A DNA stretch of 64,000 nucleotides, taken from Gekko japonicus. Its lineage: Eukaryota. A program made the position numbers and the translations under genes. The number at the start of each line of letters is the position of its first letter. Position 1 is the stretch's first letter. Location of the stretch: assembly GCF_001447785.1 (NCBI RefSeq), contig NW_015165838.1, forward strand, positions 906,594 to 970,593. The letters run 5' to 3'. A model generated the notes under the pieces. It did not search any database. It had not been told where the DNA came from and saw only the letters and a program-made list of their open reading frames with translations. Shown in pieces: positions 32,972 to 64,000 of the stretch.

Positions 32972-35900
32972 CTGAAATAATAAAACCTAGTCAGTGTCTG
33001 GTAGAAGTTCAGTGCTGCTGGAGTTGTGTTTTGAGATGGGTAAGTTTTGCGATGTGAGCTGCATGCTTAGGTTCCCTTTCTGGCTGAACTGATTATCTGT
33101 GCAGCTTTTTAAAAGGTTGTTTTGACAGCAGCTGCCACCACAACACATGGATTTTTACTGCACGGCTGAAGATAAGACATGTGTATGCAAGAAAATATTT
33201 TTAAATAATATGCTCATTTTAAAAAGCATCCTGTTATACAGAGTGTCTGACTGAAATGTTGGAGAGTTACTGTTAATATTATGCATGACCTCACTTCCTG
33301 ACATCTTGTGGACATACCCACCACCAATGTTCCCTCTAAGCTGTGGAGTCTTGTGAGCAAAAATTCTACTTTGTGAGCTACTGGCATTAAAGTTGTGAGC
33401 GAGCAATCTGGCTGCTGCATAAGTTAGTTTGCTCTGGAGCCGTCCTTCCTGAGCTAAGACAAAAAAGTGTGAGCCAGAGGCTAAAAAACTGTGAGCTAGC
33501 TCACACTAACTCAGCTTAGAGGGAACACTGCCCACCACCCTGTGTCAGAATTCCAAAGATGCTTGCAAACCCAAAAAGGCTATCGACCCATTTTAAGGCT
33601 TTAAAGGTCAAAACTAACGTTTTAAATTGGTCCTAGCAACAAACTGCTAACCAGCATAATTAGCAGAGAAAAGGAATAATGCTGCACCAGGCCAGCTCGG
33701 TTAGCCAGTACACTGCTGCCCTGCGCCAGTTTTAGACATTTAGAATGATATAGACCCTGATCGTGATGCAGGGATGTAAATGGACACAGCCAGAAACTTA
33801 TCAGCTGCAGGCTTGTTCTTCGTGTAAGTCTTGCTTTCTATGCTGACATCAACACAAGGGGCATTAAATAGTTCCCAGGGCAGGTTATATCCTGCTATCC
33901 GAGAGTGGCTTAAACAGCTATGTAACCCCTTTTCTTATTTCCCCCCTAAAGCACCGCTGTGCCTGAGAAATAGAACCGTGATTCTTACATACCAGCCACC
34001 CCTGCTCTCCCCTGGCTAAGTTGTAGCTGTCGTTTACCTGAGCTGAGGTCCAGCTAAATTGACTTGAATTGTCAGAATGTTCTTCCCAGTTATTTTCAAA
34101 ACTGTCCTCTCAATTTCCTCTTTCAAGTTGTCTAATCCATACCCCAGGAGAGCAGAAATGGCTATGGCATTTGGTTCAGTAGAATGATAACTAGGAGAAA
34201 ACAACAGACAGAAAGGCAACCTTAGTGCAAGGAGCAACTTAGTTGAGACGAGAAGAAGAAGGGATTGGATTTATACCCTGCCCTTCACTCGGAGTCTCAG
34301 AGCAGCTTACAAACTCCTTTCCCTTCCCCTCCCCACAACAGACACCCTGTGAGGTAGGTGGGGCTGAGAGAGCTCTTGCCAGAAACTGCTCTTTTTCAAG
34401 AACACCTCTTATCAGAACTATGGCTTGTCCAAGGTCATCTAGTAGCTGCAAGTGCAGGAGTGTGGAATCAAACCCAGTTCTCCAAGATTAGAGTCCGCGC
34501 ACTTAACCACTACACCAAACAGGAGTGTAGTGGTAAACTGCACTTCCTACTGGAAGTTTTTTCTTTCAGAAACAAAATGCACTACACAGCAAACATTTCA
34601 TCCCTTTCTTCCATTCTGAAAGAAAAAATAATATTTGTGACCTGCAGATGATTGTATTATTTAATGCTGAACTGGAGGAGAATATTCTAGGACATAGGTC
34701 TATGGTATGATTTTAGGAAATTTCTATCGGGGATAATTCATGAGCACCAGATACAGCCAGAAGGGTGGGAATATTCATATATGAATTCAACTTTCTGCAT
34801 GTTCACCTTGTTGGTACTGAATACCAATAATACTAAGGCATCCCTTCTCTTTTACAACATGCCTTTCTACTACAGCAGCTCCTCTATCTCCCCTTTAAGG
34901 ATTGTACTAGTCTATACGCTTTATGAGCTGTCTCTTATCTTTTCATCTTCTGAGGGCAAATGTGAACCATTCCTAAGGGTTACAGAAAAAGCAGCTCATT
35001 CATAAACCAGTTTGGGGAGGGGCCGTGGCTTAGTGGTAGAGCATCTGTTTGGTATGGAGAAGGTCCCAGGTTCAATCCCCGGTATCTCCAGTTAAATGAT
35101 CTGGCAATAGATGATGGGAAAGACCTGCCTGAGACCCTGGAGAGCTGCTGCCAGTCTGAGTAGACACTTGATGGACCAAGGGTCTGATTCAGTATAAGGC
35201 AGTTTCATGTGTTCAAGCTAAGGAGAATTTCAGGCCACGACCTAGCTCATGTTTTACCATGTTTAAAACTCAAGGAAATCACTGATAGGTAAAACAGTCT
35301 ATAAGGACCGTCTCATTTGCAAGGGGCTTTGAAATGGGTTTAAGCTGAAGACATTTTCTTGGGGAGGGGTGTAAATGGAGTTTCTACTGTACAGTTATGT
35401 TTTTAATTTTGGAATTATAAGCTGCCTTCAGCCACAAGGGAAAGGCTGGGGGAGAAATATTTTAAAGGATAAATAAATGTTATTCTACATTTATTCTGCC
35501 TCAGTGGTTTGAATGTGAATGCCTTAACTCTGGGACACAAACTGGACTCCTGTTCCAGTGCAACACAGCGGGGCTGCAACACTGCACCAGAAACACAGCC
35601 AAGAATTCTGGCACAAATTGACTTCATTCTGAAGACGTTGAACTGATTTAATCTGTGGACTGGGCTGGCTAAAACATGGAATGAAATGATATTTCAGAAA
35701 CGTCCACTCTATCTCTTACCTGTCTACCAAATCCACTTTGTTGTGAACTTCAATAATTGACTCCAGTAGCTGGCTGGGAAGGCTGAGGTTCCTGAGAACG
35801 GACAAAACACTTTCCTTCTGGAGGCTGGTCTCTGGATGGCTAATATCCCTCACGTGGACAATTACGTCCTAGCAAAGGAAACAGACAACATGAATGCATG

Positions 35901-38900
35901 AATCATTTGCTTTTTAAAACAGAGGCAAGAAAGCAGAATAAAACAAGTTCAGCTTTACTACTTGACAAGACAGATAGTTAAAACTGAGCTTGAGGCTGAA
36001 GGCATCTTGTAATTCCAAAATTAAAAATGTTAATTCCAAAATTAAAAATTAATTAAAGATTTAAAAAGATATACTGTCTGTAGTATGACTCCCTCTCATG
36101 CTAGGAAGTAGGAACTGTTTTCCTGCCTATCATAATTATTAAAGATTCTAATGGAAAATTAAACTCCACTTTCTTATTCCAAAGTTAAAGAGAAGTCTTT
36201 AAACAGAAAGGAAAATAACTTGAAAATGCGATTGAAAATGTCCATGTGTTAACAGCTTCCAAAATTCACACACAAATGGAAAACATTTTCCATCTTGCTC
36301 TTAAAGTCACACAACTACTCTTACAAGGCATTCACCTGTGCAGAAATGCAGCGTGGAGGTGGTGTGTGAGCATGCTTGATTACTTCTAATCTCCACGAAG
36401 GCTAAAACTGGCAAATAGCTCAGACTATCAGTGTCCTTTTCTGGAAAGTCTGCTCAGAACCATTGGCCATGCTGTATTACTGACACCAGAACAACTAGTA
36501 TGAGTCCATCCATTCAGAGATGGTTCAAAATGGCATCGCAATAATGTTCTGTTGCAAAAAAAAAATCCTGTGTGTCTAAAGTCCTCTCCACACAAAAGTT
36601 GTCCACACAAACAGATAAGAAAGCCCGTACTTTGCAATCACGTTATCAGAGAGGACATGTTCAGTACAGAGCAGTGATGAAATTAGTGTAGGAAGGCAGG
36701 ATACAACCTTCAATCATTGGCTTTGGACAAGTCAAAATGAAACCTATGAATACTCTGGAGCAAGTGCAATATGTACTGGGATCACAATATTTTGCACCAA
36801 TGTGAAGGGCAGGTCCCTCCCCCCCAGATGTGTGTCAAGCTGGCGTTTAGAATCCATCCATGTACCTACCGAGTAGGCTACGTCTTCTAGTGTAGCTGAA
36901 AATGATTCAATAAGGTCATGGGGCAACTGAGAGAGAAATCCAATGGTATCAACATAAAGAACAGTCAGGCGTGATGGCAGACAGCCAGCATGAGCTGTAA
37001 TGTCCAGTGTGGCAAACAGGCGATCTTGAGGCTGTAATCCTGAATCTCCAGTGAGGGCCTTGATCAGAGTCGTTTTCCCTAGCAGAAGTCAAAGCGATAG
37101 AAGATATGAACTGAACACTTGTGATTCACATAAACTGAACTGCTGCACTAAAAGAGGTAACAGGATATACACAGATTTGCAGCACAAACTCACCCTCAGA
37201 TTAATAGCTGGCATTTCCACCTTCTTGAAATCTGCCATGAACACATAATTTTAGTGTTGCAAACAAGCTTTCAGGGAGTGGTCACTTGTTTCCCTGTCTA
37301 GATGCTTCCCCACTACCCCCACCAATTACTAAGACAAAGCATACATTTGTACCTGAGAAAACAACTGAGGCCAGTGGGTCTGTGAGCCTTGCCATGAGTT
37401 TTGGTGATGGGGAATGGGAGGTGCTGTGGCTCAGTGGTAGAACATCTGCTTGGCATGCAGAAGATCCCAGGTTCAATCCCCAGTACCTAGAGTTAAAAGA
37501 TCTGGCAGTAGGTGATGTGAAAGACTTCTGCCTGAGACCTTGGGAGAGCCGTTGCCAGTCTGAGCAGACAATACTGACCTGATTCAGTATAAGGCAGCTT
37601 CATGTGTTCAAGTGCAGCAGGCCACTCCCCACAAACACTCCAGCACCACACGTGCCGCTTCCTTCAGCTACTCACCAATGCCAAGCAGATAGTGGCATCG
37701 ATAGCAAAGGGAAAGCTGTTTGTGGGGCTGCATTTGTAATCTTAGCATAAGAGTGGGAGTTCCACAAATCGATCTACAGAAAGCTTTTTAAAAACATTCA
37801 TAAATAATAGTTGAAGGGGCCACAATGTAGGCAAAAAAGAGGGTCTAATCCTTCCCCTATGCACTACATTCCTGACCACAAGAGTTCCCTTAGAGTGACT
37901 ATTCTCTCCCCCCCCCCGGGGGGGGGGGGGAGGAAACCCGGAGTCTGCACTTTCTAGAGTTAAAAGATCTGGCAGTAGGTGATGTGAAAGACTTCTGCCT
38001 GAGACCTTGGGAGAGCCGTTGCCAGTCTGAGCAGACAATACTGACCTGATTCAGTATAAGGCAGCTTCATGTGTTCAAGTGCAGCAGGCCACTCCCCACA
38101 AACACTCCAGCACCACACGTGCCGCTTCCTTCAGCTACTCACCAATGCCAAGCAGATAGTGGCATTGATAGCAAAGGGAAAGCTCTTCGTGGGGCTGTAT
38201 TTGTAATCTTAGCATAAGAGTGGGAGTTCCACAAATTGATCTCCAGAAAGCTTTTTAAAAACATTCATAAACAATAGTTGCAGGCGCCACAATGTAGGCA
38301 AAAAAAGGGTCTAATCCTTCCCCTATGCACTGCATTCCTGACCACAAGAGTTCCCTTAGAGTGACTATTCTCTCCCCCCTCCGGGGGGGGGGGGGGGGTG
38401 GGAAACCATACTGCACTTTCAGTGGGGCTAACAGCCTGTGGATTTGCAGGACAGGAAAAGGGGTGGGTGGGAGAAATGAAGGTTACTGATCCAAGTGGCT
38501 ATACACAAAAACACTCAGAGAAATCTCCCTGCATCTTGTCTGATTTTGCCCTTTGCAGCAAATGCAGCCCTCAACTTTTTCTTAGCCTGCATTATTTTGA
38601 CTTGTAGCAGCCACGTTTGCATGTACGCCATATATCCATCTGCCTGCTGATTATGCTACTGCTGCTCCAAGTAGAAAGCACCAGAAATATAGGCCTATAG
38701 AGGCGATTATACTTTCTGTGTCTTTCAGGCAGCTACAACCCGAACTGCAAGGAGTTGCTTTATGTTTCCCAGGCCAGTCAGCAGAGCTTAGCACTCTGCC
38801 CCTCCTCTCTGGGATGTTAGGCAAATATAATTTCCCAGTCAGCTGCTTGCCTCAGGGCTGTACTACATGTCCCAGGTGAAATACAAACAGTAAGAACCAT

Positions 38901-50900: not shown

Positions 50901-53467
50901 CTTTATTCTACCACTCCATTAGGCCAAGTCTGAAGGTTTCTCCCAAACTAAGGACCCTTCTCCCTGGTTAAGGGTTTGCCCTCCAATGAAAGCATCCCTT
51001 AGGCTGGGGGAACTCTCCTTATGCAAAGGCAAAAAAAGAGTTGGTTTTTATATCCTGTTTTTCTTTACCCTATGGAATCTTTAAGTGGCTTACAATTGCT
51101 TTCCCTTCCTCTTCCCACAGCAGTCACTTTGTGAGGTAGGTGGGGCTGAGAGAGCTCTAAGAGAACTGTGACTGGCTCAAGTTCACCCAGTAGGCTTCAT
51201 GTGGAGGAGTGGAGAATCAAACCTGGTTCTCCAGATTTAGTCTGCCACTCTTAACCACTGCACTGCATTGGCTCCATAATAACTTATCAACAGAATACAT
51301 TCTCTCACCTAATAGTGCAAAACATCTTCCATTACATGAGTTATTTAAACTAGTCTCTAATTCACAGATACTTAATTGGCAAGCTTAAATGTCTGCGATT
51401 CTAAACCTGCTAGGCTTGTTCACATATTTCACAGCCAATTATTTACACAGAACTTTACAGCTTTCTATGAAGCGTTCTAATTTATGGATATTCCATATAA
51501 CTGTTTGAAATAATCTGCAATGCAAAATTCAAGTAGATTCTTAAGTCTATTGTAACATTAACTATTGACAGGATTACATGATGCACAATTACAAAGTAAT
51601 AGCAGAGAAAAACTTGCTTCAGAACTTGGATTTTCCCCTTACCAGTCAGAAGCTGGAAATTCCCTTTACCAAAGATAAGAACCTGGTCAGCATTTTTTGT
51701 AGAAAGAATTATTTTATCTACAACTGTCCAGTCTTGAATGGTGTTTATGAGCGCAACAGCCTCAGCAAGTTGAAGTTCAGCTGTAACATCATAAAACAAG
51801 ATATTAGTACAGTCCTAATGATAAGTTTCCATAAGCACTCAATTATAATACAAAACTGGTGAAATTAGTACCTGAAAAGTTAAGTCAGAGACAAAACTCT
51901 AACCTATAACTTCAGCACAGTAGGAATTTGTCAACAAGTTTTCCATCTATCAATAAGTACACATGTACATATATAATCCACAAGCCACACCACTATAAAT
52001 ATTTAAATCAATAAAAATGAACACAGATTCAAGTAGCAGATATGTATTTACAAACCAGTTTCACATTTTCCTTCAAAGATTAATGTAACACTAGGAATAC
52101 TGTTTTAAAGCATAGAAATTAACATTAACATTAATAAATGTTTCAAAGATTTCACTTTGAAAGTGGTTAAGAGGCAGGAATGAACTAAGGAGTGAAAATG
52201 GCCTCGGGGAGTATGCCAACTCGCTTTACCCCACAGCACTACACTCTAGTGCTTCTGGAGTTTTTCAGTTCAGCTGTATTAATGATGGGTATTAGTTCAT
52301 TGACTTGCTGCCTCATGAAAACTATTAGCAGAGCAGGACACCAATTATCATCAGCAACTAAGCGTCTAAGCTAAAGGTCCTTGAGGCTCTGGGAGAGTTG
52401 CTAGAACTTGGTTATAGTTGCTCCTAACACCCACCAGTCTTCAACTGCAGTGGCCCACCAGGAAATTCCCCTGTAAGTTAATTTTATTTTTATTTATTTA
52501 TTATTAAATTTATACCCCGCCCTCCCCACAAGGGAGTCAATCTACCCCTGTTGAGAGGACCGCTAATACATTTGGCAGATTTGTCAACATAAAAGCCTGC
52601 AAAGGTTGTGTTGTCTTCCTTCTTCAGTACCAACACTGCCACACTATTCACTGAAACAGAAGAATCCCCAAAGATATATTTAAAAAACACTAGCGTACAG
52701 GACAAACCATTTAGTGACATGGAAACACCTGTGTCACACACGTTTGTCCAAACACAAGAATCAAGATTAATTCCTGCAAGTTCTTCTGCACAGGGGCAGG
52801 AACACCACGCCTTGTATCAACTCGCGTTCACTTTTACCTGTGCGGCTACATACCCGCACCATATACAGAAATCAATCGTTTTGGTTTTGCCACCCTGTGC
52901 AAGAGTAACGGTTCAGAAGGTGCACATAAAACTCAGCTGCAGCAATTTCCCCGCCTGGCGCTAGTATTCACGCAACACAGCTAAGGCTACAGTTGCCACT
53001 TGGACAACAAAGCCTCATAGGAACCGGCTATAAACACGAGTTTATAGCTGCCTGGCAACGTGCATCACACCTGTGGTTAGCCGAGCCTTGCCTGGCCCCC
53101 ATTTCACAGCTGGATGCACCACAAACACTCTCTGGACGCCAAATGGCAGAGAGGGCAGCGCCGATTCCAGCAGCTCGTCCTCAATCTCAAGTTCTCCGTC
53201 CTCCTCCTCCTCTTCTTCCTCCTCCTCCTCCTCCTCGCCTTCCTCTTCGTCGTCTTGGTCACCGCCGAGTCCTGTCCCCCACCTACCACCACCCTTATCT
53301 TGCTTTCCTCGAGTGGGCCCATTGCTCGACCCCAGGAAGCGGTAGCTGACGACACTGGCGTGCAAAAGCTTGGCAGGGCGACGCACCAGGCAACAAGCAG
53401 GTGCCAAAGGGAAAAGCGCGCGGAACCCCCGACGCAGCTGCAGTAGCTGCCGCCACCGAGAACCCAT
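32812..53467 (-). CDS. GTPBP6: GTP-binding protein 6 (mitochondrial HflX-family GTPase), complement join(53071..53467,51643..51780,45348..45418,44251..44381,41907..41977,40519..40677,36870..37078,35720..35868,34038..34190,32812..32971), 545 aa
   Basis: Ten GT-AG exons total 1638 nt in one open frame. HflX motifs are FDRYSVVLHIFRRNARTKEAKLQ, G1 GYTNCGKT, G2 LFATLD, G3 DTIG, G4 NKVD and G5 SAL. The Arg/Leu-rich N-terminus resembles a mitochondrial presequence. Confidence 0.95.
33325..33530 (+). mobile_element. hAT MITE (TIR CAGTGTTCCCTCTAAGCT)
   Basis: TIRs plus a perfect 8-bp TSD CCCACCAC (33317-33324, 33531-33538); a second copy starts at 45613. Confidence 0.85.
34038..34190 (-). CDS. GTPBP6: GTPBP6 exon 9
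   Basis: YHSTEPNAIAISALLGYGL...AGPQL; 153 nt. Confidence 0.93.
34253..34519 (-). mobile_element. Squam3-like SINE
   Basis: Closely similar to 6811-7088. Confidence 0.85.
35018..35214 (+). mobile_element. tRNA-derived SINE with CR1-like tail (Squam2-like)
   Basis: A box TGGCTTAGTGG and B box GGTTCAATCCC; other copies at 37417-37610, 7560-7745 (-), 30415-30500 and the window end. Confidence 0.75.
35720..35868 (-). CDS. GTPBP6: GTPBP6 exon 8
   Basis: DVIVHVRDISHP...VHNKVDLVD; 149 nt. Confidence 0.94.
36870..37078 (-). CDS. GTPBP6: GTPBP6 exon 7
   Basis: GKTTLIKALTG...LFATLD...DTIGFLSQLPH...DVAYS; 209 nt. Confidence 0.95.
37417..37610 (+). mobile_element. Squam2-like SINE; its 3' half is copied in the tandem duplication
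   Basis: Matches 35018-35214. Confidence 0.75.
37487..38420 (+). repeat. Tandem duplication, 2 x ~467 bp
   Basis: 37487-37953 and 37954-38420 differ by about ten substitutions, concentrated in the 3' half. Confidence 0.93.
40519..40677 (-). CDS. GTPBP6: GTPBP6 exon 6
   Basis: GETFMEIQ...ISVMGYTNC; 159 nt. Confidence 0.94.
41907..41977 (-). CDS. GTPBP6: GTPBP6 exon 5
   Basis: TNVRNEVAQMDQQRGGSRYIMGS; 71 nt. Confidence 0.92.
42878..43320 (-). mobile_element. CR1 LINE 3' fragment
   Basis: TTATGTTCT-type terminus plus ORF2 end (GAAGTACTTCCTTTT). Shorter copies at 7930-8105, 8938-9050 and 29080-29192; another CR1 3' type at 66-132 and 4136-4202. Confidence 0.8.
43722..44086 (+). repeat. Tandem duplication, 2 x 181 bp with GAT microhomology
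   Basis: 43722-43902 and 43903-44083 differ by one substitution. Confidence 0.95.
44251..44381 (-). CDS. GTPBP6: GTPBP6 exon 4
   Basis: KAFEEAWGVEVFDRY...AEIPILR; 131 nt. Confidence 0.94.
45348..45418 (-). CDS. GTPBP6: GTPBP6 exon 3
   Basis: DKIEELPHISAVFVNVERLSLPTK; 71 nt, GT-AG. Confidence 0.92.
45613..45819 (-). mobile_element. hAT MITE, same family as 33325-33530, opposite orientation
   Basis: TIRs; TSD CATAGGAC/CATAGTAC; inserted inside an older hairpin repeat. Confidence 0.85.
46150..46515 (+). mobile_element. L2 LINE 3' fragment
   Basis: TCCATTGGCTGCCAATT...TCCAAGGTAC...TTGAAAGACCACCTGCTCCC, resembling the L2 ORF2 end, then a T-rich 3' UTR. Confidence 0.55.
47010..47760 (-). mobile_element. 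Non-LTR retrotransposon ORF2 C-terminal fragment (RTE-X-like)
   Basis: LTVPKLRRAFTLARLNVLP..LEGKY...RTC.C...TIKHIIMECP...LR: a C-terminal CCHC domain broken by frameshifts. Confidence 0.65.
48399..50086 (+). mobile_element. Bov-B (RTE) LINE, 5'-truncated and internally deleted
   Basis: Bov-B ORF-like sequence (IPKKKKCKKAKWLS; GRGTRDQIA; LSPCLFNLYAEYIMRNAGL), (CAA)n tail, and TSD AGAATGTAATGT at 48387-48398 and 50087-50098. Confidence 0.92.
51040..51275 (-). mobile_element. Squam3-like SINE (shorter subfamily)
   Basis: Same head and tail, lacking the internal insertion. Confidence 0.75.
51643..51780 (-). CDS. GTPBP6: GTPBP6 exon 2
   Basis: AELQLAEAVALI...IFGKGNFQLLT; 138 nt, GT-AG. Confidence 0.93.
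53071..53467 (-). CDS. GTPBP6: GTPBP6 exon 1
   Basis: ATG at 53467 (MGSRWRQ...); encodes QRVFVVHPAVKWGPGK; donor G|gtgtga. Confidence 0.88.
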
Positions 53468-53960
53468 CAGGATTTCTGTGTGTAACACTCATTAAGTTCC
53501 CCCAGGCGCTGCGGTCCTCTCTCAAAACAAGTCCCCAACTAAACGAAAGCCACTCTGGTTGTTCTTCCTTCCCTCATGTACAGCGCAGGCGTCAGAAGCT
53601 TCTAAGCTCTGCCTACCACGTCACCTTCTGTCCCGAGCAGAAACAGAAAGGGGAGGGGGGAGGCTCTCAGTGGCGCTCCTTCGCAGAGACGGATGGCTCC
53701 AAAATCTGCTTCTATTAGACAAGCCGCGGCACGTGATCTAGGAAACCTTGGAACTCTCCCGTCCTTAGGATCGTCCGGCGAGCGGCTGCTGTGGGCGGGT
53801 TCGTCGCTGCTGCTGCTGCTGCTGTGATTGACGACGGGTATGCGCCTTTCCTTTCTTGACAGGCACCGGGCCCAAGACTCGGCCGGTGCAGCCCGCTGGG
53901 TAGGGGGGCTCGCGGGGTCAGCAATGCTGCCCGAATGTTGCTCCTGGGGTGAGGAGGACC
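53100..53960. promoter_or_regulatory. CpG-rich bidirectional promoter shared by GTPBP6 (-) and the STAG-like gene (+), including a probable non-coding STAG exon 1 ending at 53837
   Basis: CpG density is high relative to the rest of the window. Motifs: NRF1-like GCGCAGGCG 53583-53591, CCACGTCA 53616-53623, E-box CACGTG 53730-53735. Donor CGG|gtatgc at 53838. Confidence 0.7.
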
Positions 53961-55992
53961 CTCAGCTTGCAAGGCTTCGGCTTCTCTTGTTGCAGTTTTG
54001 TGCTTGACATCCTCCCTATGCATGCATTTCACTGTACTCTCGCTTTCTCCCGCGCTCTTCTTCTATTGCAACAAATGTCTCTTTCTTCTGCCCGGCTTTT
54101 TACGGAAGTTCACGTTGCATCCTGTCCATGCATTCTTCCCTTGTGCTGACGCCCTTCTTGCAAGGCGCTTGGGTCTTTTGACAGTTGCATGACAGAAATT
54201 CAAGCGTTAACCTGCCCTTGCTTTCTCTCTGGTGTGAAATCAACACCCAGTGATTTTCTACCTGTCATGCACTGTTAAAGGCATAGGGACGCTGCTTCAC
54301 TTCCCAAAAAGTGACCTGGCTGCCCTTTAGGGTGTGCTTCTGAAATTTTTTTGCATCATCACTGATGCTAGGATACACTTTGCAACATAGATGCAAGGCA
54401 TCACATTCTGAAGTTCCTTCTGTATTTTGATTCCATGCTCCTTAGATTTGCATTCATGAGCAGTTTCTGTTGCATTCTCTTATAGATGTGTCTGCATTGA
54501 ATCTACTTTGGTAAAATTACACATACATATTGATATCATTTTCTTTGTATTATATCTCACCGCAATACAGTGCTTTAAACTTTAAAGGAAGGTAGGTATG
54601 GATTGCAAGTAAAACAGAACTTCCTGATCATAAGAGCAGTTCACTCTGAACAAGTCTTACTAGTTTGGTTCTTGGAAGTTTAAAACAAACATTTGATGTC
54701 TTCTGTTTCATGGCACAAAGGTGGAATAGATGAACTGTGCCTTCGTATAGTAAAAGGCCACCTTTTCAATGCTGTGTCTTGGCTTTCATTTAGAAAAGTT
54801 GGCCACCTTTCGAATGAAACAGCAGATTATTTTCTAGTGGGGTTCTAGAGCAGGAACAAAGAAAATGTTTTCTAGCTAAGGCTGTCAAATAACAGGCTAT
54901 CCAAACTTTAGTTTAAACAGCAGTCAGGATCAACAACCAGTTAGGTTTTATTGATTTTTGTACGTTGTATACTGTCAGAAATTAATATCCGGCTTTTCTA
55001 GCAAAACAACTACTATGTTTTGCTATCCTCTGTCTTCTGTGGAACCTGTGTTATTGTGGGTGGAGAGAGGATGTGTAATTGGGGGGAGAGGTTCCTGTTT
55101 GGTTTTATTCCGCTCATTCTAATTTGTTTTGTTTTTTAGTGTAGCTGGTTTTTTATTGTAATGCATTTTATTTTAATTGCTTTAATGGCTTTTTATGGTG
55201 CAAAAAAGCAGCATTTAAATATTTTAATAAACAAATAGACAATAGGCTTGGTGTAATTCACATCTGCTAGTACTTCTGCTCTCACTTGTATGATGAGAGA
55301 CAGAGCTTAATTCAGTACAGCATGCTTCCACTCAAAATCATTAAGACTTTACATGGTGTAGTACGCTGAATACTGGCCTTGGACTAATGAGACTCAAGTT
55401 GCTTGTCCAGTTATACAGTTTGATGTGATGTCCTTCAGCAGTTAACTTTTCTTAGCCAAACAGAGCTCATAAGGCTGTTTTGGAGATAAAATAGGATAAC
55501 TCCAAATATGTCACCCTGAAAAAGTTGGAAATAAACATGTAACAAATGGAAAGATCTATTTATCTTTTTGATAAACCTTTTTTTTCCAGCCCAAGGAAAA
55601 AATCTTGCTAACTCCATTGTTGGTCTACTGCATTTTGAACACTAATGGTTTCCAAAATGGTATTTTACTGAAGGAGATTTTTGACTGATAGGATCATTCA
55701 CAAGTTTTGCCCCATGGGTTTGCTGCTAAAATAAAAAATAAGAATTTTTTTAGAATCTAGAATTTTGGCATTTAGTTTTAGAATTTCTGCTGTTAACATA
55801 TATTTTAAATGCTATAATTTGAGGTTTGTCCTGTCTTGCTTCTTTTTATTTTGTGCAGTTTTGCTGTTTGCTTCTCTTGATGGAGACCTGAAGAACATGA
55901 ATCTGGATCTCTGCTGCTTATATTCATTTTCATGCTGAAGTGTCTACTAAGGCTAAACTTGCTTTATGTGCTGCTGAGAGAATGTAGTGGCA

Positions 55993-56036
55993 ATGATAGC
56001 TGAACCCAATTCCGTTGTTAATCTCCCCAACCACAA
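55993..56036 (+). CDS. STAG-like first coding exon part ([15 protein letters not shown]); exon probably starts at 55859
   Basis: Strong acceptor tctttttattttgtgcag ending at 55858; GCAATGA start context; donor AA|gtaaga. Confidence 0.72.
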
Positions 56037-59000
56037 GTAAGAACTGAAAAGCAGGGCACAAACTGTACAGTGATGTTTTTATTGCACAGTCTGGGTCATG
56101 TATTTCCTGTGTTTTTGGAGGGTTGCAGGGGTGTGCGTGTATACGTTCTTGTTTAGGAATCACACTGACAATTGTAAATGGGCTAGTGGGCTACATCAGA
56201 AAAATGATACACACGTGCTTCCAGGGACATGTGGATACAGCCTCTAAGAAAGAGGATAGATGGCACATTTCAGTAGTGGTCTCAGGGGGTTCTTCAGCTG
56301 TGGTATGATTCTGTCTTGGCCAGATGTCCTAAAGCCAGACCATATATTACACCAAGCTGCATGCAGTATTAACCCAATGGCCGCTGTTTCTCTCCAAAGC
56401 ATCAATGGAAGAGGAAAAATCAATGGTTTTCAGCAAAGGGGCAGTCGTGTGTGTGTAACCCTTCCTTTTTACTCTAGAATAAGATCCTCCTTCCTCTGTG
56501 AGCAGCGGGAACATATGGGTTGTTGGTTGATGTATAGCTTTGATTCTTGGTTCTTTTTAAGAAAAGGGATTGCTGTGCTTGTCACTGTGGCTTCCCTTAT
56601 GGTCTCTTCACAGCTTGGGCAATTTCTAGGGGAGAAATGAATTCTGCATGCCTCTCATTTTATGTAAGTGATGGGAGGGGGTGAGCTGTGTGTGGTGGTT
56701 GAACTGAGACACAGTTTGTGTCCCCCTTCCTTGAGCACTTTGGAAATACAAAAACAGAGAGTTGCCACAGTGGTATCCCAGGTTGCTAGTGTGGCCACTC
56801 TTTATTTTTTTGATGTTTCTGAGGTCTTGTAAGGCTTGCAAAATGAGTTTCAATGCAAATGTCAGTCATGGTTCTGGAAGCTTGATTATAGTTCTGTGTC
56901 TGCTTCCTCAAGGAGCTAAGCAGAATCGAGGAGCTATGGCTTGCAGTGAACTGTCAAACCATCATGGTGTCTTCCTTGGCAAACTATAGATCTGTTTGTT
57001 GCTCTGCTTCTGGAGGCCTCTGCTCCATAGTAATGGGACTGCTGAGCGGGTGGAAAGTGAAAGCACGTAAGCAACTCTGGCTTGCACACTTGTAGGTTCA
57101 GATTGTAATTTGGGTTCTGTGATCAGTGCAAACTCATCTTTTAGCACGATCCTTGTCTCATGCGGCCTTGCCACCCTTTGAGCATCCTGATTTTGGGCCT
57201 AAAATAAGTGTGAGCCGAGCTATTCAGTTTTCATAGTGGTGCCTTTTCATGATTGTTTGTCCAGATGATGTGGGAACTGCTGTGGATAGGGTTGCCAACC
57301 TCCAGGTGGCACCTGGAGATCTTCTGCTATTACAGTTGATCTCCAGATGACCCCTGGAGGTTGCTTTGGAGGGTGGACTCTATGGCATTGTACCCTGTAG
57401 AGGTCACTCCCCTCCCCAAACCACAGCCTTCCCAGGCTTCACTCCCCAAATCTCCAGGTATTTCCAGGTATTTCCCAACCCAAAGCTGGCAACCCTAGTT
57501 GTGGCTGAAAGACAGTCTATAAACACCATAAGGAAATAAACACAATGATATTTGATGTAGGGGTTGGTCAGCAGCTCGGGTTTTAGAGGCTGTACCTGTG
57601 TTTCACCTGAATCTTTCCCTCCCCCTTCTCACTAATTTACAGTGCAGTCCTAAGCAGAGTTACATCCCTCTAAGTCAGCTGAAGTCCATGGGTGTCATTC
57701 TGTTTAGGAGTGCATTGTGAATGACCATGGGTTGCTAAAATAGGCTTGATGGGCCTGATGTGCCCTGAAGGCCTTAGGGTACCCACACCTGCTTTGATGC
57801 ACATTTTATATTTGTATGTTCAGGAGCAAATCAGTGGATGAATTTGATTGAGGCTGGCTGTTATGGAGGCCTGAGCATTTTAGCCCTATGATATATAGTC
57901 ACATGTACAGTCTGAGCCAGTGCTCAGAAGTAAGCTCCACTAAGTTCAGTGAGACTTACTCCCAATGAAGTGTGCATAGGAAGTGTGGCCTTAATTTGAC
58001 CAACTGGAGAGTTCCTGTCTTTTTGTTGCAATGTCTAATAAACAGTATCAGAGGTGAACTGTTTAGTGTCTGCATTCGAGACCAGGAGCACCTTAGAAAC
58101 CAACAAGATTTCCAAGGTATCAGCTTTTGGGAGTCAAATTTCCCTTCCTCAGATACTGACGAAGGCAGCTTTGACTCGCAGAAGTTTATACCCTGGAAAT
58201 CTTGTGGGTCTTTAAGAGCAACTCAAATATTGCTCTTCCACTGCAGTCCAATATGGCTCCCCACCTGAAAATGTTTAATGTTAGCATCTTTTATTTTACA
58301 CCCACAATGGCTGAACATACTATGTTTTATAGTAATCTGTTAAACCAGTAGTAGCTGGTTTCATGTCTGTTGTGACTGGCAGTTGCCCTTCAAGATCTCA
58401 GTTACAGAACTTTCCCAGACCAGCTTCAACCAGACATACCAGGGATGAAATCTGTTATTGTTTCTTTTGAATTTATTTCGGTAACTCGAAACATTATGTA
58501 AGTACTTACTGCCTGGGGGCACTGTGAATAAATTGCTAACTGGTATGTGGGAAGGTGTGGGAAAATCTAGTGTGAAAATGAGACTTGTAATTAGTGTACA
58601 TGTATATAAATTAGGGTGAGGCAGGCTCTGTTTGGATTTGCTGTTTCTTGTGTTATCATATACGCACAAGCCTGAACAGATGAACTAAACTGTAGTAGTC
58701 TAGGGGTCCTTAAAGCAAGAATTTGGAAAAAATTGTATTGGAGGTTAATACAACCTGTGTTTTATTTTGAATGGTTCTACAACATTTGTATAACTGAGAT
58801 GATGAAAAAACACGTCCTTTTCTAGGAGCAGATGGATGTACACTAGATTTCAGAGGGTCTTCACTGAGATTGTTTTTATTTATTCTTACAGTTTTTGCAA
58901 CCAATAGCAAACTGAGATGATTTAGTGCATGGGCCAAGCTAGATATTACATAGGAAGTGCATGGAGAATTTTCTGTCTGAGAAACCATATAAATGAAAAG

Positions 59001-62000
59001 AAGCCATGAGAGGCTGCAGTCGAGTAGAGAGGTGGCTACGTCTTACCCCTTTCTGCCTTTTTTTCTGCTGAAAACAATCCACCCCTTATTTACCACATAT
59101 GGAGAAGAAGAGAGGGGGACCCCAGTTTTCTTAGTTCTGAAGGAAAAAAGCAGCCAGGGAGGGTTGTTTTTCCCCCAACAGAAAATAGCTGCTCTTCCAT
59201 TGCCAATTACAGTTTCCCCCAGCCACATTTCAGTTTTTGAAAAGTCTGTAAACTGCTCTTGCATCTCCTCTGCTATGTCTAATTTTGTCCCATGTTGGCT
59301 TGGTTCCAATGTGATATAATAGCAAAACTGTGGTTTGCTGCTACTTGTATTAGCCTGTGGAATTTTCAGGCATGCATACTTCCCCTCCCCTGACAAATCT
59401 AATGAGTTATTTCCATTTTTACTACTAACCATATTTAGCCACAGAACAAAGTTTGAGTCCAGTGGCACCTCTAAGACCAACAAAGTTTAATTCTGTGTGT
59501 AAGCTTTCATGCACATGCATACCCAAACTTTATTCTGTTGCTTCAGACCAACACGCACTACCCATCTGAATCCATATTTAGCCATATATCTGAATAAACA
59601 AACAGTGCTTTCTGCTTTCCCTGTAAACCAGGATTTCATACTGGAAACAAGTCACTGGCTGCATTCAGATATCACAACAAACAGGCGTTTGTCCACGTTG
59701 GGCATTAATGCTACTTATAGCTTTCTTCCCCTTACTCTTTCCTTCCTCCTCATATACAGAGTATTATTGAAGCCTTCTGGGGTTTGGGAAGGCTTGAATT
59801 AAACTCCAGATTTCCATGGCATTCTAAAATCCAGGTTTGGTTTGGTGGGCAAGCTCCAGTTTTTCCAGGCACCTGCATTTGGATCTGATGTGACTTGGGG
59901 TTTAGCTCAGGCTCTGTGTGCGAGTAAGGACTGAGTGGGAAGAGCAAAGGGAGCCCAAGAGCACAGCAGCTAACAGTGTTCATGCCTGGCAGAGGCATGC
60001 TGTTTAGAATCTTGGTTTGTGAAAAAGCTCAAACCATAGTTTGCCATTTGGGCTGTACAGGCAAACTCTAGTTTGCAGTAGAAGTGAAGCAGCTGCGTGC
60101 AAGAAGGGACGGAGCATGCAAGTCTAAGGATTCACTAGGGTTGTTCACATAGTCATAAAATTGTGTTTCATGTTGTCTCAACCTAGGCCTTGTGTGTATC
60201 TTTGGATTTGTGTTAAACATGCTAATTAATACAAGAGTCCCTGTTTGATAAACATAGGAAGTCCTGGATTGAGAAACTATTTGCTGCAATATTTAGTATT
60301 TATTTTCAGGATTGGGGTATCGGTTCTTTTAAGCAGACACACCTCAGATATGTTACTCCCTTTGTTCACATCTTTATGTCATCTTTTTTCCTCCAATGAC
60401 TTAGAGAAAATGGGATCCATGAGGAGATTGTCCCTGAACCCACTGCTCAAAATGGCAACTGTTTAAGAAATGGCAGTGTTAAAACTATTGTAAGTTTCTG
60501 TTATGTTTGTGAATTTTTTAATTGTACAAGAGAAAATAGGTCTGTCTAGGTTTCATTGATCTGAACATGTGATAAGATGTGTCTGTTAACAGTAAATAGA
60601 TGAAACTGGCAAATGTTGACATTCATATGTGAACGCTGACAATTCCAGGTGAATTTTGTGAAAGGCTGAAAATAGATATTTATTTCTCCACTTTTCAGAC
60701 TCTTAAGCAGTGAATGCTGTTGTTAGCATTCAGCATTGAATGGGTCTGATACAGGGATATCCAATTTTAGGGCAGGATATTGGACTAGGTAGCCGACTGG
60801 GTATCTCTCATGGCTATGAATGTATGGTTTTCCTGTGACTGGAGCATTTGCAGGAAACATTATCAGGCATTTAGTTTCACAGAGCCTTGAGTTCTGAGGT
60901 TAAAAGGGTTTATTGGGCATGTTTTTGGGCTGGTTGACACATGCATATTTATCACATGGAATTCTTGGGCTATATTCAGACATTCAGGCCTATGTCTACC
61001 TCTTTCTTATGGTTGGGATAGGGTTACCAGAGCCCTCCAGTGGAGGCAGGGGTCCCCTGCTGCCAGGCCCCACTGCTGATCAGCTGGCTGGTGGCGGGAA
61101 CTCCCCCCCCCAATAGTTTTTATCCAAATACTAGAGTGTTGCCCCAACATCCCTGATGTGATGATGTTCCTTCCGGGTCAAGTGGACAGTGGTGTGGGCA
61201 CATCACTGCATGTCAGCCGGGCCTTCCTCATACTCCTGGTAAGTCCCCCCCCAATTTGCCGCTGGGGATGAGCCTTGGCTTGGCAGCACAGGTATCCATT
61301 ACTACAGTCCTGTTCTCCAACATGCAAAAAAAATGTAATTGCGAGCCCAAATGTAGGAACTAGGCTCACAGTTATGAAATAACTTTTTTTGCAATATATG
61401 TGGTTCATTCTTGTGTGGAAATCACCATTAGAGGTTCTGTCTACTATCTGCTGGTTTCAGCTAATTCTACTATTAAACTCAGTCGTTTCATAAGTGGGTG
61501 ACTCTCTGCACCCTTAGGAAATGGAACAAAGAGCTTTGAATATCACATTGTATAGAGCAGATATCCTACCAATTTTGTGAAGTTGTCTTCTGCGTGCTAC
61601 TTGTCATTGTTATGCTTGGTGAGTGTGTGTGTATGTATGTATTGTGAATTTGATTATGTAGATGCGAGTCTGAGGAGATTAAATTGTGCAAGTAAAGCAA
61701 GAAAAAACAAAATAATACAATGATAAATGGCATAACACAAATCTAAGATTACCTATGCATGGCCTTCCTTAAAGTGTGAAAACCATTTCTTCTGCCTGAC
61801 AACAGTAACAGGTGTTAATTCTGTATTATTGCCAGTGTGTAAAGATGTGATGGATGGCAATAGTACTGATTTAACAAATTAAATAAGCACTGGTGGATTG
61901 ATCTGTAAATGTTCCACCTTTATTTTTAACTCCCTTATCTTTCTGTCTTTCTCATACCCATAGATAAGAAAGGTTGGCCCAAGAGAGAGGAGAGATGATC

Positions 62001-62681
62001 TTGCCCCATTTTCCTCTTCACTTCTGCCTCTGTACCGCATGCCTTTTTGTTTGCTTGGATCCCATGATCTTGGACTTACCTTTTTGGAGAGTCAAAAGGG
62101 GCCTTTCTTCCCCCTTGTGCCAGCAGAGCAGCTTGTAGGCTTCATGCTTACTCTTCTGTGCTAAGCATCAAGACATTTCTAGGCCATTAAGCACCTGCCC
62201 GTCATTATGTTTCTCTCTTTGCAGTTGCTTTGAAAGAATTATGTACCTATCAGATGAATGAAACCCTTTGTCTTCTCGCTTACCATTGTTAGTTAAGGAA
62301 TACGTTTGATCTTTATTGCTTTAGAAAGGGAAAAGAAAAATCCGTGAGCAGTGTGAAAACAGAAGACGAAACTCTTCCAGTAGCAGAAGGTCGAACCAGC
62401 CACAAAATGGAGATGTGGTTGAAGCAGTTACCTTATTTGAAGTGGTTAGCATGGGCAAAAGAGCTATGCAGGTACATCAACTTCCTGAGCTGACTAGACT
62501 TTTGTATGTGAAATAGTGAAAGGCTGCTAGCAATTGGTGTGCTTCTAGTTTTTGATCTCTGGCTTTTTTTGTCATCCGTTTTAGTCTGTGGTCGATGACT
62601 GGGTTGAAGCTTATAAGAAAGATCGTGATGTGGCCCTTCTGGACCTTATCAATTTCTTCATTCAGTGCTCAGGCAGCCAAG
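55993..62681 (+). CDS. Cohesin subunit SA-2-like (STAG1/STAG2-family stromalin), 5' partial: join(55993..56036,60405..60489,62325..62471,62585..62681), continues beyond window
   Basis: The translation ends ...[15 protein letters not shown]|[33 protein letters not shown], matching STAG1/2 [43 protein letters not shown]. The first coding exon is 44 nt and starts MIA, as in STAG2. Intron phases 2,0,0,1 are compatible. Confidence 0.85.
57287..57497. mobile_element. hAT MITE with TAGGGTTGCCA TIRs
   Basis: TAGGGTTGCCA...TGGCAACCCTA; degenerate TSD GCTGTGGA/GTTGTGGC. Confidence 0.75.
59435..59572. mobile_element. Penelope-like terminal-repeat fragment
   Basis: AGAACAAAGTTTGAGTCCAGTGGCACC..AAGACCAACAAAGTT motif; related copies at about 17812-17915, 46797-46930, 50593-50685 and 58060-58265. 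Confidence 0.55.
60405..60489 (+). CDS. STAG-like coding exon 2 ([28 protein letters not shown])
   Basis: Long pyrimidine tract plus ttag|A; ATT|gtaagt. It is the best stop-free phase 2-to-0 exon I found, and it lies in a low-conservation region. Confidence 0.68.
62325..62471 (+). CDS. STAG-like coding exon 3 (KGKRKIREQ...[13 protein letters not shown])
   Basis: ctttag|AAA ... CAG|gtacat; 147 nt. Confidence 0.88.
62585..62681 (+). CDS. STAG-like coding exon 4 ([10 protein letters not shown]...QCSGSQ-G)
   Basis: ttttag|TCT ... G|gtaaat; 97 nt, the conserved size of this STAG exon. Confidence 0.92.
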
Positions 62682-62837
62682 GTAAATCTTTTTCCTCTGG
62701 CCAGTTTCCTTTTGAGGGAGAGTGCGTACAAGTTGTTTGGAGCAGGGCTGATTCTTTAAATGATTGCGTTATTCAGAATCTGGCTTATTATCTCCTAATG
62801 AGTCCACATAAATGAATGAACCTCCAATTTGAATAAT

Positions 62838-63113: not shown

Positions 63114-64000
63114 ATTTGAATAATGGGATTGCAGGAAAGAGGCAAACAAATGGAATGTTCACAAGTTATATTAGTCTTTGGAGCTCATGTTTAAGAAATT
63201 AATACAGAATTGAGTTATGTAAAGGATAACGAATGAAAATGATTTGATAAGGGGTGGCAAGTTAGAAATGTTTGGTGGTATGCTACCCTGCCAGTGTAAC
63301 TTGCTGGTCAATGTGGATCTTCCCTCTACTCCTTTATCCCAGCGGCCCCTTTTGAACTATGAAAAGATTATGCTGGAGGTCATTGGACGCTCATGGGTTT
63401 TGATGCAGGTCAGGGGTAATTGGGTAAAATTTGCCCCTTCTCCCTCTTCTGAGGACAGAGCCTCAGGACCTCAAAGAATAGAAGAGGGAGGAGGGCTGAT
63501 TTGGCTTTTCCCCCTCCACCCCCCGCTCCATAGTGCAGATCTCCGGTCTGAGAGGTTTTTTGTCCCCATGGGTCATGTATCCTTAGGTATCAGCTTTTGG
63601 AGGGGTCCATGATGCTTGTTTGCTAGTGTATTCCACTGAAGGTTAGAAAGATACACACAACTGTGTTGCCTTTTGGAATTAATCACTTTTGATTCATAGA
63701 CAGAGTTGTTACCAAATCTTTCTGATAGTTAAAGCAGAGGAGAGACTGAGAAGAGAGTGTGTAAAAAGAACACATGAAGCTGCCTAACACTGAGTCGGTA
63801 TTGTTTGCTCTCTGACTTGTCACATGTCTTCAGAGTCACATTTTATTTGATTTTATATCGTCCTTTCTCCAGATCGGTGGGAGGTGAATAAAATTAGATT
63901 TAAGTAGCTTGCATAAATTTAAAAACAAACACAGTATCACTTTTATGGAGAAGCTGGAGACTGAATCTGGGATCTTTTGCAGGCAAAGTAGATGCTCTGC

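What the first reader, a model, noticed from the sequence alone, without database searches (positions are those of the whole stretch)
55859..62681. Candidate fourth vertebrate stromalin (STAG) paralogue at the PLCXD1-GTPBP6 (PAR1-syntenic) locus
Seen: four phase-compatible exons (44, 85, 147 and 97 coding nt) encode [24 protein letters not shown]...-KGKRKIREQ...[46 protein letters not shown]. Known: human has three STAG genes (STAG1 at 3q22 near PPP2R3A, STAG2 at Xq25, STAG3 at 7q22) and none between GTPBP6 and PPP2R3B in PAR1. From memory, STAG2's first coding exon is 44 nt and starts MIA, while STAG1's is 29 nt. The conserved block here is STAG1/2-like rather than STAG3-like, yet it differs from both at positions that are very conserved (S and R in [20 protein letters not shown]), and the N-terminus cannot be aligned. 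Inference: this is a separate ohnologue retained in sauropsids and lost in placental mammals. PAR1 and 3q share PPP2R3B/A, SHOX/SHOX2 and PLCXD1/2 paralogues. Such a gene would give an extra cohesin variant with its own disordered N-terminus. It may already be annotated as 'SA-2-like' without having been characterised.
Basis: partly seen in the sequence, partly recalled or inferred. Interest (0 to 1): 0.8.

Follow-up and report, generated by a model that had tools for sequence, protein, structure and literature searches.

The report
Fourth vertebrate cohesin STAG gene, gecko
The window holds the first four exons of an expressed gecko gene for a fourth type of cohesin STAG subunit, which databases label "SA-2-like"; most vertebrate groups sampled carry it, but among placental mammals only carnivores and pangolins turned up, and no paper I could search describes it.

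Summary
Four AG/GT-bounded exons (55993-56036, 60405-60489, 62325-62471, 62585-62681) match residues 1-124 of RefSeq XP_015266465.1, "cohesin subunit SA-2-like" of Gekko japonicus (1199 aa), at 100% identity. RNA-seq shows the exons spliced together. PLCXD1-like exons (+) and GTPBP6 (-) lie upstream, and a CpG island sits between GTPBP6 and this gene.

The protein belongs to its own clade, here called SA2L (support 100/100). The clade contains teleosts, lungfish, amphibians, sauropsids, echidna, marsupials, carnivores and pangolins, and its inner order follows the species tree. It is separate from STAG2, a STAG1 fragment and STAG3. An origin inside gnathostome STAG2 is rejected (AU p = 6e-7). 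True STAG2 co-exists with SA2L in the same species.

SA2L carries a conserved 24-residue insert that the other paralogues lack. It diverges roughly five times as much as STAG2 and keeps all the ligand-pocket residues tested.

Two points are wrong or unproven. The gene is not lost in all placentals. A 2R origin fits the data but is not shown.

The gene is already annotated. No searchable paper describes it as a fourth STAG. Its tissue of expression and its function are untested.

The parts
55859..55992 (+). Presumed 5' UTR part of the first coding exon (acceptor ...tgtgcag|tttt at 55858/55859)
   Evidence: Sequence only. The RNA contig of run X8 extends 519 nt upstream of exon 2, which is more than this piece plus the 44 coding nt, so at least one further 5' exon or a longer exon exists. 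Reads did not check this stretch.
55993..56036 (+). Coding exon 1, 44 nt, [14 protein letters not shown] + 2 nt, donor GTAAGA
   Evidence: It is 100% identical to P0179 residues 1-14. The MIAE start is shared by SA2L from lungfish to marsupials and resembles the MIAA start of STAG2.
60405..60489 (+). Coding exon 2, 85 nt, (K)[28 protein letters not shown]
   Evidence: It is 100% identical to P0179 residues 16-43. RNA-seq covers it, and the joint 60489>62325 is seen in 4 runs.
62325..62471 (+). Coding exon 3, 147 nt, basic serine-rich stretch followed by [15 protein letters not shown]
   Evidence: It is 100% identical to P0179 residues 44-92. It aligns to human SA-1 residues 63-99. RNA joints are seen on both sides.
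62585..62681 (+). Coding exon 4, 97 nt, [32 protein letters not shown] + 1 nt
   Evidence: It is 100% identical to P0179 residues 93-124. It scores 51-53 bits against human SA-1 and SA-2. The X8 contig joins it to exon 3.
52750..54250 (.). CpG island between GTPBP6 (-) and the STAG gene (+), probably a two-way promoter
   Evidence: GC 0.52-0.60 and CpG o/e about 0.7, against 0.0-0.3 in the flanks. Promoter activity is inferred.
53045..53467 (-). ORF that holds GTPBP6 coding exon 1 (Met at about 53467, acidic run)
   Evidence: ORF list. It resembles the human GTPBP6 N-terminus as I recall it. Pfam gave only low-complexity hits.
51485..51814 (-). ORF that holds a GTPBP6 exon (HflX-type N-terminal domain)
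   Evidence: Weak Pfam GTP-bdg_N match, E = 0.034.
36747..37088 (-). ORF that holds a GTPBP6 GTPase exon (GKTTL...DTIGF)
   Evidence: Pfam MMR_HSR1, 24.5 bits, above the cut-off of 21.9. Motif scan.
35719..35868 (-). ORF that holds a GTPBP6 exon with NKVD
   Evidence: Motif scan.
10978..11178 (+). ORF that holds a PLCXD1-like exon (GSHDTMTY)
   Evidence: Motif scan. The name rests on my recall of human PLCXD1. Pfam found nothing.
25257..25589 (+). ORF that holds a PLCXD1-like exon (VIVSYED...PYWWGN)
   Evidence: The name rests on recall.
26800..27198 (+). ORF that holds the last PLCXD1-like exon (GLFVAGINLT...IIAGDF)
   Evidence: The Atlas feature search gives 'PI-PLC X 1 domain-containing protein' clusters at 0.93 and 0.91, which is a lead only.

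Best explanation
Window 55993-62681 (+) holds the first four coding exons of the gecko orthologue of a fourth vertebrate STAG (SCC3/SA) gene. RefSeq calls it 'cohesin subunit SA-2-like'; I call it SA2L here. The gene is intact, transcribed and spliced, and it runs off the end of the window.

SA2L is its own orthogroup. It arose before the split between sharks and bony vertebrates. It is present in teleosts, lungfish, amphibians, sauropsids, echidna, marsupials, carnivores and pangolins. Its sequence diverges about five times as much as STAG2's.

The group is marked by a 24-residue insert (LQYKKFMAYPWILTVTWPVDMDNE) placed just before the STAG domain. The insert is better conserved than the rest of the protein.

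Inferred mechanism: SA2L is an alternative SA subunit of cohesin. Its HEAT body binds a kleisin (RAD21, REC8 or RAD21L) and offers the same composite pocket for YxF-type ligands (CTCF, SGO1, WAPL) as SA1 and SA2. The insert and the clade-specific disordered N- and C-terminal tails would give it its own partners or regulation. The cell type in which it acts is not known.
For: Shown:
- Exons, splice sites and a 100% match to a 1199-aa RefSeq model.
- Spliced RNA in four runs.
- Pfam STAG, SCD and HEAT_SCC3-SA domains in orthologues, and precomputed for P0179.
- 1200 bits to human SA-2 and 1177 bits to SA-1.
- An AlphaFold model whose body (about residues 85-1085) is confident and matches SA2-SCC1 structures at TM 0.84 and 55% identity.
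- CES pocket residues named in PMC10279526 (SA2 Y297, W334, L329, L366, F367, R370). Y297, L329, W334 and F367 are unchanged in all 29 SA2L sequences aligned. L366 is L in 27 and V in 2. R370 is R in 26 and K in 3.
- SA2L clade at 100/100 in a careful ML tree of 41 rows x 1196 columns, and SH-aLRT 100 in a quick PMSF tree. Its inner order follows the species tree.
- AU test rejects SA2L inside bony-vertebrate STAG2 (p = 6e-7).
- True STAG2 and SA2L occur in the same species: Sphaerodactylus, Pelobates fuscus and Lonchura.
- The loose insert motif is in 134 held proteins, all from the SA2L searches. None of the STAG2-search hits (P0294 and later) has it, and the frog STAG3 and crinoid SA rows aligned lack it too.
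- Mean pairwise identity among the 29 SA2L is 79% in the insert and 63% in the body.
- Gecko-frog identity is 57% for SA2L and 92% for STAG2.
Against: - No experiment or co-purification links SA2L to cohesin. The function is inferred from homology.
- Only 4 of the gene's exons lie in the window. The rest rests on the RefSeq model and the 1407-nt RNA contig.
- The insert is modelled with low confidence (pLDDT under 50, a weak beta-hairpin), so its role is a guess.
- STAG1 is represented in the tree only by a fragment of about 215 residues. STAG3 is represented only by frogs and a pike, with a long-branch warning.
- Fast evolution and loss in many placentals could also mean weak constraint.
Confidence: 0.82

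Rival explanations
1. SA2L is not a 2R ohnologue. It is a single-gene or segmental duplicate of STAG2 or STAG1, made on the vertebrate or gnathostome stem and later moved next to GTPBP6.
For: The deep order is unresolved. SA2L+STAG2 alone and SA2L+STAG1 fragment alone are each not rejected (p-AU 0.24), and SA2L with STAG1+STAG2 gives p-AU 0.47. No shark or lamprey SA2L was seen, though none was specifically sought.
Against: The ML tree puts SA2L outside STAG1+STAG2 (95/93) and weakly with STAG3 (65/15). The gene sits beside PLCXD1 and GTPBP6. From memory, that block (PLCXD1, PPP2R3B, SHOX) has paralogues (PLCXD2, PPP2R3A, SHOX2) near STAG1 on human 3q, as expected for an ohnologue. This was not tested here.
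Confidence: 0.3
2. It is the sauropsid orthologue of meiotic STAG3, misnamed SA-2-like because STAG3 evolves fast.
For: It evolves fast, like STAG3. The ML tree weakly joins SA2L and STAG3 (65/15). The motif 'PGSYWKKF' resembles human STAG3 as I recall it.
Against: Frog SA-3 and frog SA2L share only 40% identity, and SA-3 lacks the insert. STAG3 (frogs + pike) and SA2L (which also holds frogs and teleosts) are separate clades at 100/99 and 100/100. The duplication therefore predates bony vertebrates.
Confidence: 0.03
3. It is this species' only STAG2 (or STAG1), moved to the GTPBP6 locus.
For: NCBI names some members plainly 'SA-2' (Anolis carolinensis, Zootoca, Chelonia, Lonchura).
Against: Gekko SA2L is 55.5% identical to gecko STAG2, while gecko and opossum STAG2 are 96.7% identical. 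True STAG2 and SA2L co-exist in Sphaerodactylus, Pelobates fuscus and Lonchura. AU rejects nesting in STAG2.
Confidence: 0.02
4. It is a decaying or non-functional copy (pseudogene or transcribed relic).
For: High divergence. It was not found in most placentals, and only short fragments are annotated in platypus.
Against: Full-length open models of about 1160-1240 aa exist in well over a hundred species. The tree follows the species tree. Pocket residues are kept and the insert is 79% conserved. The RNA is spliced.
Confidence: 0.03

Closest known systems
STAG2 / cohesin subunit SA-2 (human Xq25)
   Same: Same domains (STAG, SCD, HEAT_SCC3-SA) and same fold: TM 0.84 and 54-55% identity to SA2-SCC1 structures. 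The CES pocket residues are kept. The start is MIA with a 44-nt first coding exon, and the exon 3/4 border is the same.
   Different: It forms a separate clade, and nesting in STAG2 is rejected. It has a 24-residue insert after the FDEE(T/S)G motif. Its sequence diverges about five times as much. The N- and C-terminal tails cannot be aligned, and the conserved acidic C-terminal end of STAG1/2 is missing. Its neighbours are GTPBP6 and PLCXD1-like exons. For STAG2, a fused XIAP-STAG2 gene model in sturgeon points to XIAP as the neighbour.
STAG1 / cohesin subunit SA-1 (human 3q22)
   Same: Nearly as similar as STAG2 (1177 against 1200 bits). Exon 3 aligns best to SA-1 residues 63-99.
   Different: The STAG1 fragment groups with STAG2, not with SA2L (95/93). 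The frog STAG1 fragment has the basic run KRKRGRPGRP, which I take from memory to be the STAG1 AT-hook; SA2L has no GRP core in its N-terminus. STAG1 has no insert.
STAG3 / cohesin subunit SA-3 (meiotic)
   Same: Both are fast-evolving STAG paralogues. The ML tree weakly makes them sisters (65/15).
   Different: 42% identity to frog SA-3. STAG3 has no insert. The two are separate clades, each holding both frogs and ray-finned fish. Germline expression of SA2L is not known.
Teleost stag2a / 'cohesin subunit SA-2a'
   Same: It is also called a second Stag2. In zebrafish it is described as more divergent than Stag2b, maternal and enriched in the ovary (PMC7750468).
   Different: Proteins that NCBI names SA-2a (Pygocentrus, Oryzias) sit inside true STAG2 as a teleost duplicate and lack the insert. 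Teleost SA2L (Sebastes, carp, Neosynchiropus) is a further gene. Equating the 'SA-2a' name with zebrafish stag2a is my inference.

Membership tests
Cohesin SA/STAG (SCC3) family | STAG domain (PF08514), stromalin conservative domain (PF21581) and SCC3/SA HEAT domain (PF24571) | tested here: met
   All three score E = 1e-29 to 1e-85 in the snake, frog and lungfish orthologues. They are precomputed for the Gekko protein P0179. The four exons in the window lie upstream of these domains, and Pfam finds nothing in them alone.
Cohesin SA/STAG (SCC3) family | Elongated HEAT-repeat fold of SA1/SA2/Scc3 | tested here: met
   AlphaFold model with mean pLDDT 71 and a mostly confident body, many 10-residue blocks at 80-96. 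Foldseek best matches are SA2-SCC1 and SA1 cohesin structures at TMt 0.84, then yeast Scc3 at 0.67-0.68.
Cohesin SA/STAG (SCC3) family | Conserved essential surface residues that form the YxF pocket with the kleisin (SA2 Y297, W334, L329, L366, F367, R370; PMC10279526) | tested here: met
   All are present in P0179. Among the 29 SA2L sequences, four are unchanged, L366 is V in 2 and R370 is K in 3.
Cohesin SA/STAG (SCC3) family | Physical association with SMC1/SMC3 and a kleisin | not testable with these tools
   Needs co-immunoprecipitation or reconstitution.
STAG2 orthogroup | Groups inside the clade of gnathostome STAG2 | tested here: not met
   SA2L forms a separate clade at 100/100. Forcing SA2L together with bony-vertebrate STAG2 costs 72 lnL units, p-AU 6e-7.
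STAG2 orthogroup | A single STAG2-type gene per genome outside teleosts | tested here: not met
   STAG2 and SA2L are both annotated in Sphaerodactylus townsendi, Pelobates fuscus and Lonchura striata. This was not checked in Gekko itself.
STAG3 orthogroup | Groups with proteins named SA-3 | tested here: not met
   Frog and pike SA-3 form their own clade at 100/99. They share 40-42% identity with SA2L and have no insert. No mammalian STAG3 was in the tree.
STAG1 orthogroup | Groups with STAG1; N-terminal AT-hook | tested here: not met
   The frog STAG1 fragment joins STAG2 (95/93), not SA2L. The SA2L N-terminus has no GRP core. STAG1 was represented only by a fragment of about 215 residues, and SA2L+STAG1 is not rejected by AU (p = 0.24).
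2R ohnologue of STAG1/2/3 | The duplication predates the gnathostome radiation | tested here: inconclusive
   An origin after the shark split is rejected. The order of the deep clades is open. No chondrichthyan or cyclostome SA2L was sought or seen.
2R ohnologue of STAG1/2/3 | Lies in a chromosome block paralogous to those of the other STAG genes | not tested
   The window shows PLCXD1-like exons, then GTPBP6, then SA2L.

The most novel reading that the evidence does not exclude
SA2L is a true fourth ohnologue that forms a distinct cohesin variant with a specialised role, for instance in the germline or early embryo. Its conserved 24-residue insert would be a new partner-binding element. Loss of the gene in human, mouse and most other placentals, while it persists in dogs, cats, pangolins, marsupials, birds, reptiles, frogs and fish, would explain why the cohesin field counts only three STAG genes.
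Probability: 0.35. Interest if true: 0.75.

Novelty: new member of a known kind. Interest (0 to 1): 0.6.

Why it matters
Cohesin variants are defined by their SA subunit. STAG1 and STAG2 differ in loop extrusion, CTCF anchoring and cohesion, and STAG3 is meiotic. A 2023 review still counts two somatic Stag paralogues for vertebrate classes other than zebrafish (PMC10003631).

A fourth, well-conserved orthogroup has three consequences:
- Chicken, Xenopus-like frogs, lizards, dogs and cats may have a cohesin variant that human and mouse lack.
- 'STAG2' annotations and antibodies in those species may mix two genes.
- The insert gives a testable handle for new cohesin partners.

The gene is also a clean case of differential loss of an ancient paralogue. 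In placentals it probably sits in the pseudoautosomal region, which is inferred only from GC-driven amino-acid make-up and X-sized scaffolds.

Tried and rejected
- Pfam on single exons and on the PLCXD1-like ORFs gave nothing useful. The PLCXD1 name rests on recalled sequence plus a weak Atlas lead.
- Hypothesis 'SA2L = sauropsid STAG3': rejected.
- Hypothesis 'SA2L = zebrafish stag2a': proteins named SA-2a fall inside true STAG2 and lack the insert, so probably not. Whether zebrafish has SA2L is unknown; carp does.
I therefore have no look at the rest of the gecko gene, at PPP2R3B downstream, or at synteny in other species.
- The search of earlier findings had nothing on STAG, PPP2R3B, SHOX or XIAP in this genome.
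- Paper searches for SA-2-like, STAG2-like, STAG4, STAG2L, and PAR plus cohesin found nothing relevant. One search was swamped by 'fourth stage'.
- No full-length STAG1 could be obtained within the three protein searches.
- The PMSF 'careful' tree did not finish in time. I used a quick PMSF tree and a careful LG+G4 tree, and they agree.
They were compared exon by exon.
- No human sequence was fetched or compared.
Full report
**Observation**

The four exons are real. With AG acceptors and GT donors they span 55993-56036 (44 nt), 60405-60489 (85), 62325-62471 (147) and 62585-62681 (97). Nothing exon-like follows up to base 64000, so the gene leaves the window.

Exon 4 scores 51-53 bits against human SA-1 and SA-2. 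Exon 3 ends exactly where the human proteins have the same exon border, at SA-1 99|100 and SA-2 96|97.

**Expression**

One sequencing-run search found DNA and RNA runs of the same organism, with coded names. Reads laid on 56700-62699 gave these results:
- The exon 2 to exon 3 joint (60489>62325, GT..AG) appears in three raw RNA-seq runs (3, 1 and 3 reads).
- It also appears in a 1407-nt contig of a fourth run, at depth 74.
- That contig also joins exon 3 to exon 4. It continues 558 nt downstream of exon 4 and 519 nt upstream of exon 2.
- The exon 3/4 joint has contig support only.

Exon 4 is very like human STAG1/2, and the tool drops human-like reads, so the low raw depth there means little. 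Exon 1 and the 5' UTR lay outside the 6000 letters allowed.

**Identity of the gene**

Exon 4 against 1.8 billion cluster representatives gave a 1196-aa cobra protein at 94% identity, plus frog, lungfish, bird and teleost proteins. Their sources call them 'cohesin subunit SA-2-like'.

A word search with the cobra protein listed 120 clusters. All are sauropsid, and nearly all carry that name.

Exon-by-exon BLAST against everything fetched showed that all four exons are 100% identical to residues 1-14, 16-43, 44-92 and 93-124 of P0179. This is XP_015266465.1 of Gekko japonicus, 1199 aa.

**Surroundings**

- On the minus strand, 35719-53467 holds GTPBP6 exons: MMR_HSR1 above Pfam's cut-off, a weak GTP-bdg_N match, and DTIGF and NKVD motifs.
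- On the plus strand, 10978-27198 holds three PLCXD1-like exons. That name rests on my recall of the human protein plus an Atlas lead. Pfam was silent.
- A CpG island at about 52750-54250 lies between the GTPBP6 start and the STAG gene. It is probably a shared two-way promoter.

**Is it a separate paralogue?**

A search with a true finch STAG2 (P0278, a model with an internal duplication) returned STAG2 from sharks to mammals. The hits included STAG2 of Sphaerodactylus townsendi and Pelobates fuscus. Both species also have SA2L, as does Lonchura.

I built two ML trees with crinoid and mollusc outgroups. One was a quick PMSF tree of 37 rows. The other was a careful LG+G4 tree of 41 rows and 1196 columns. 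They agree on these points:
- SA2L is one clade (SH-aLRT 100, and 100/100).
- Its inner order follows the species tree: teleosts, lungfish, amphibians, then mammals (echidna, marsupials, pangolin plus carnivores) beside sauropsids.
- STAG2 plus a frog STAG1 fragment form another clade (96, and 95/93).
- Frog SA-3 plus a pike protein form a third clade (99, and 100/99).
- The order of the three clades is open.

AU tests gave the following:
- SA2L placed inside bony-vertebrate STAG2, with sharks outside, is rejected (lnL difference 72, p = 6e-7).
- SA2L+STAG3 is the ML arrangement, at support 65/15.
- SA2L with STAG1+STAG2 gives p = 0.47.
- SA2L with STAG2 alone, or with the STAG1 fragment alone, gives p = 0.24.

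The gene is therefore an old, distinct orthogroup that predates the gnathostome crown. That it is a 2R ohnologue fits but is not shown.

The tree has limits. STAG1 was represented by about 215 residues. STAG3 was represented by frogs and a pike, with a long-branch warning. The Ferae and echidna rows have an odd amino-acid make-up.

**Distribution**

A search with the meerkat protein found full-length SA2L in:
- Carnivora: cats, foxes, otters, stoat, sea lion, walrus.
- Pangolins.
- Three marsupials.
- Echidna.

Platypus has only short annotated fragments.

No other placental order ranked above the sauropsid hits, which were 40-46% identical. That suggests, but does not prove, loss or lack of annotation elsewhere, human and mouse included. 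'Lost in placental mammals' is therefore wrong as stated.

Ferae and echidna proteins are rich in G, A, R and P (0.26-0.31 against 0.18 elsewhere). The carnivore genes lie on scaffolds of X-like size. This fits a pseudoautosomal, GC-biased location, by inference only.

**What marks the family**

- All SA2L proteins aligned, from teleost to mammal, carry a 24-residue insert, LQYKKFMAYPWILTVTWPVDMDNE in gecko. It sits between the FDEETG motif and DYPL, just before the STAG domain.
- STAG2, teleost SA-2a, frog STAG3 and the crinoid SA lack it. The carp model also lacks it, and is probably missing the exon.
- Among 29 SA2L sequences the insert is 79% identical on average, against 63% for the body, 46% for the N-terminal tail and 37% for the C-terminal tail.
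- SA2L diverges roughly five times as much as STAG2. Gecko-frog identity is 57% against 92%, and gecko-marsupial identity is 56.5% against 96.7%.
- Gekko SA2L is 55.5% identical to gecko STAG2 and 42% identical to frog STAG3.

**Likely function**

Orthologues have STAG, SCD and HEAT_SCC3-SA domains.

The AlphaFold model of the Gekko protein has a confident HEAT body, disordered residues 1-78 and 1087-1199, and a low-confidence hairpin for the insert. Its best structural matches are SA2-SCC1 and SA1 cohesin structures, at TM 0.84.

PMC10279526 names the residues that form the composite ligand pocket: SA2 Y297, W334, L329, L366, F367 and R370. All are kept in P0179. Four are unchanged across all 29 SA2L sequences, with V for L366 in 2 and K for R370 in 3.

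I infer an alternative cohesin SA subunit that binds a kleisin and YxF-type ligands. The insert and tails would confer specificity. The tissue of expression is unknown, because the run labels were coded and gave no tissue.

**Literature**

No searchable paper mentions 'cohesin subunit SA-2-like', STAG2-like or STAG2L. The single 'STAG4' hit is an unrelated oocyte paper that I did not open. No paper links a cohesin gene with the PAR genes.

The zebrafish work treats four Stags: 1a, 1b, 2a and 2b (PMC7750468). A 2023 review says other vertebrate classes have two (PMC10003631).

The library holds only open-access text, and gene-tree databases could not be consulted.

**Verdict**

The core of the interpretation, a separate fourth STAG paralogue at the GTPBP6 locus that is annotated but uncharacterised, is supported. 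The claimed loss in placentals is wrong in part, and 2R origin remains open. The gene is a new member of a known family, and it carries a conserved clade-specific insert that deserves experiments.

Noticed in passing
window 57290-57500 and 59440-59560: Two short stretches in intron 1 have very high RNA depth, many variant letters and many loose ends in all runs. They look like copies of dispersed repeats (SINE-like), not parts of this gene.
   Followed up: no
window 48396-50053 (+): A run of ORFs with reverse-transcriptase-like text (…AKWLSDETLQIAEKRRKAKGKGEKERFTQLNADFQRTARRDKEAFL…). It resembles Bov-B/RTE LINEs as I recall them and lies inside a GTPBP6 intron.
   Followed up: no
window 13333-14007 (-): A 225-aa ORF with a Ty3/gypsy-type reverse-transcriptase look. 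It lies next to the L1/Gypsy finding that the scan noted at 14959-16480.
   Followed up: no
window 60439: The RNA contig of run X8 reads T where the window has C, which changes Pro to Ser in exon 2 (VPEPTAQ to VPESTAQ). Ser is the residue in Sphaerodactylus. It is either a polymorphism or a slightly different source animal.
   Followed up: partly
window 62672-62674 (codon 123 of the protein): Gekko has Ser in CSG-S-QG where at least 90% of the 37 aligned STAG-family proteins have Cys. A Logan ORF from a related animal (P0001), with the same intron read-through, also has Cys.
   Followed up: partly
P0053 (Acipenser sinensis, 765 aa): A gene model that fuses a region I take for XIAP-type BIR repeats to STAG2 pieces. 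It points to XIAP-STAG2 adjacency in sturgeon, as in human Xq25.
   Followed up: no
P0278 / P0294 (Lonchura striata STAG2, 1484 / 1475 aa): True STAG2 models that repeat about 250 residues internally. This is probably an assembly or model artefact.
   Followed up: no
P0051, P0057 (Ornithorhynchus): Platypus has only 146- and 284-aa 'SA-2-like' fragments, while echidna has a 1203-aa protein. The cause may be decay or an assembly gap in platypus.
   Followed up: no
window 53100-53300: A long GAG/GAA-type run in GTPBP6 exon 1 encodes an acidic stretch on the minus strand and poly-Ser on the plus strand. It produces spurious Pfam hits.
   Followed up: no
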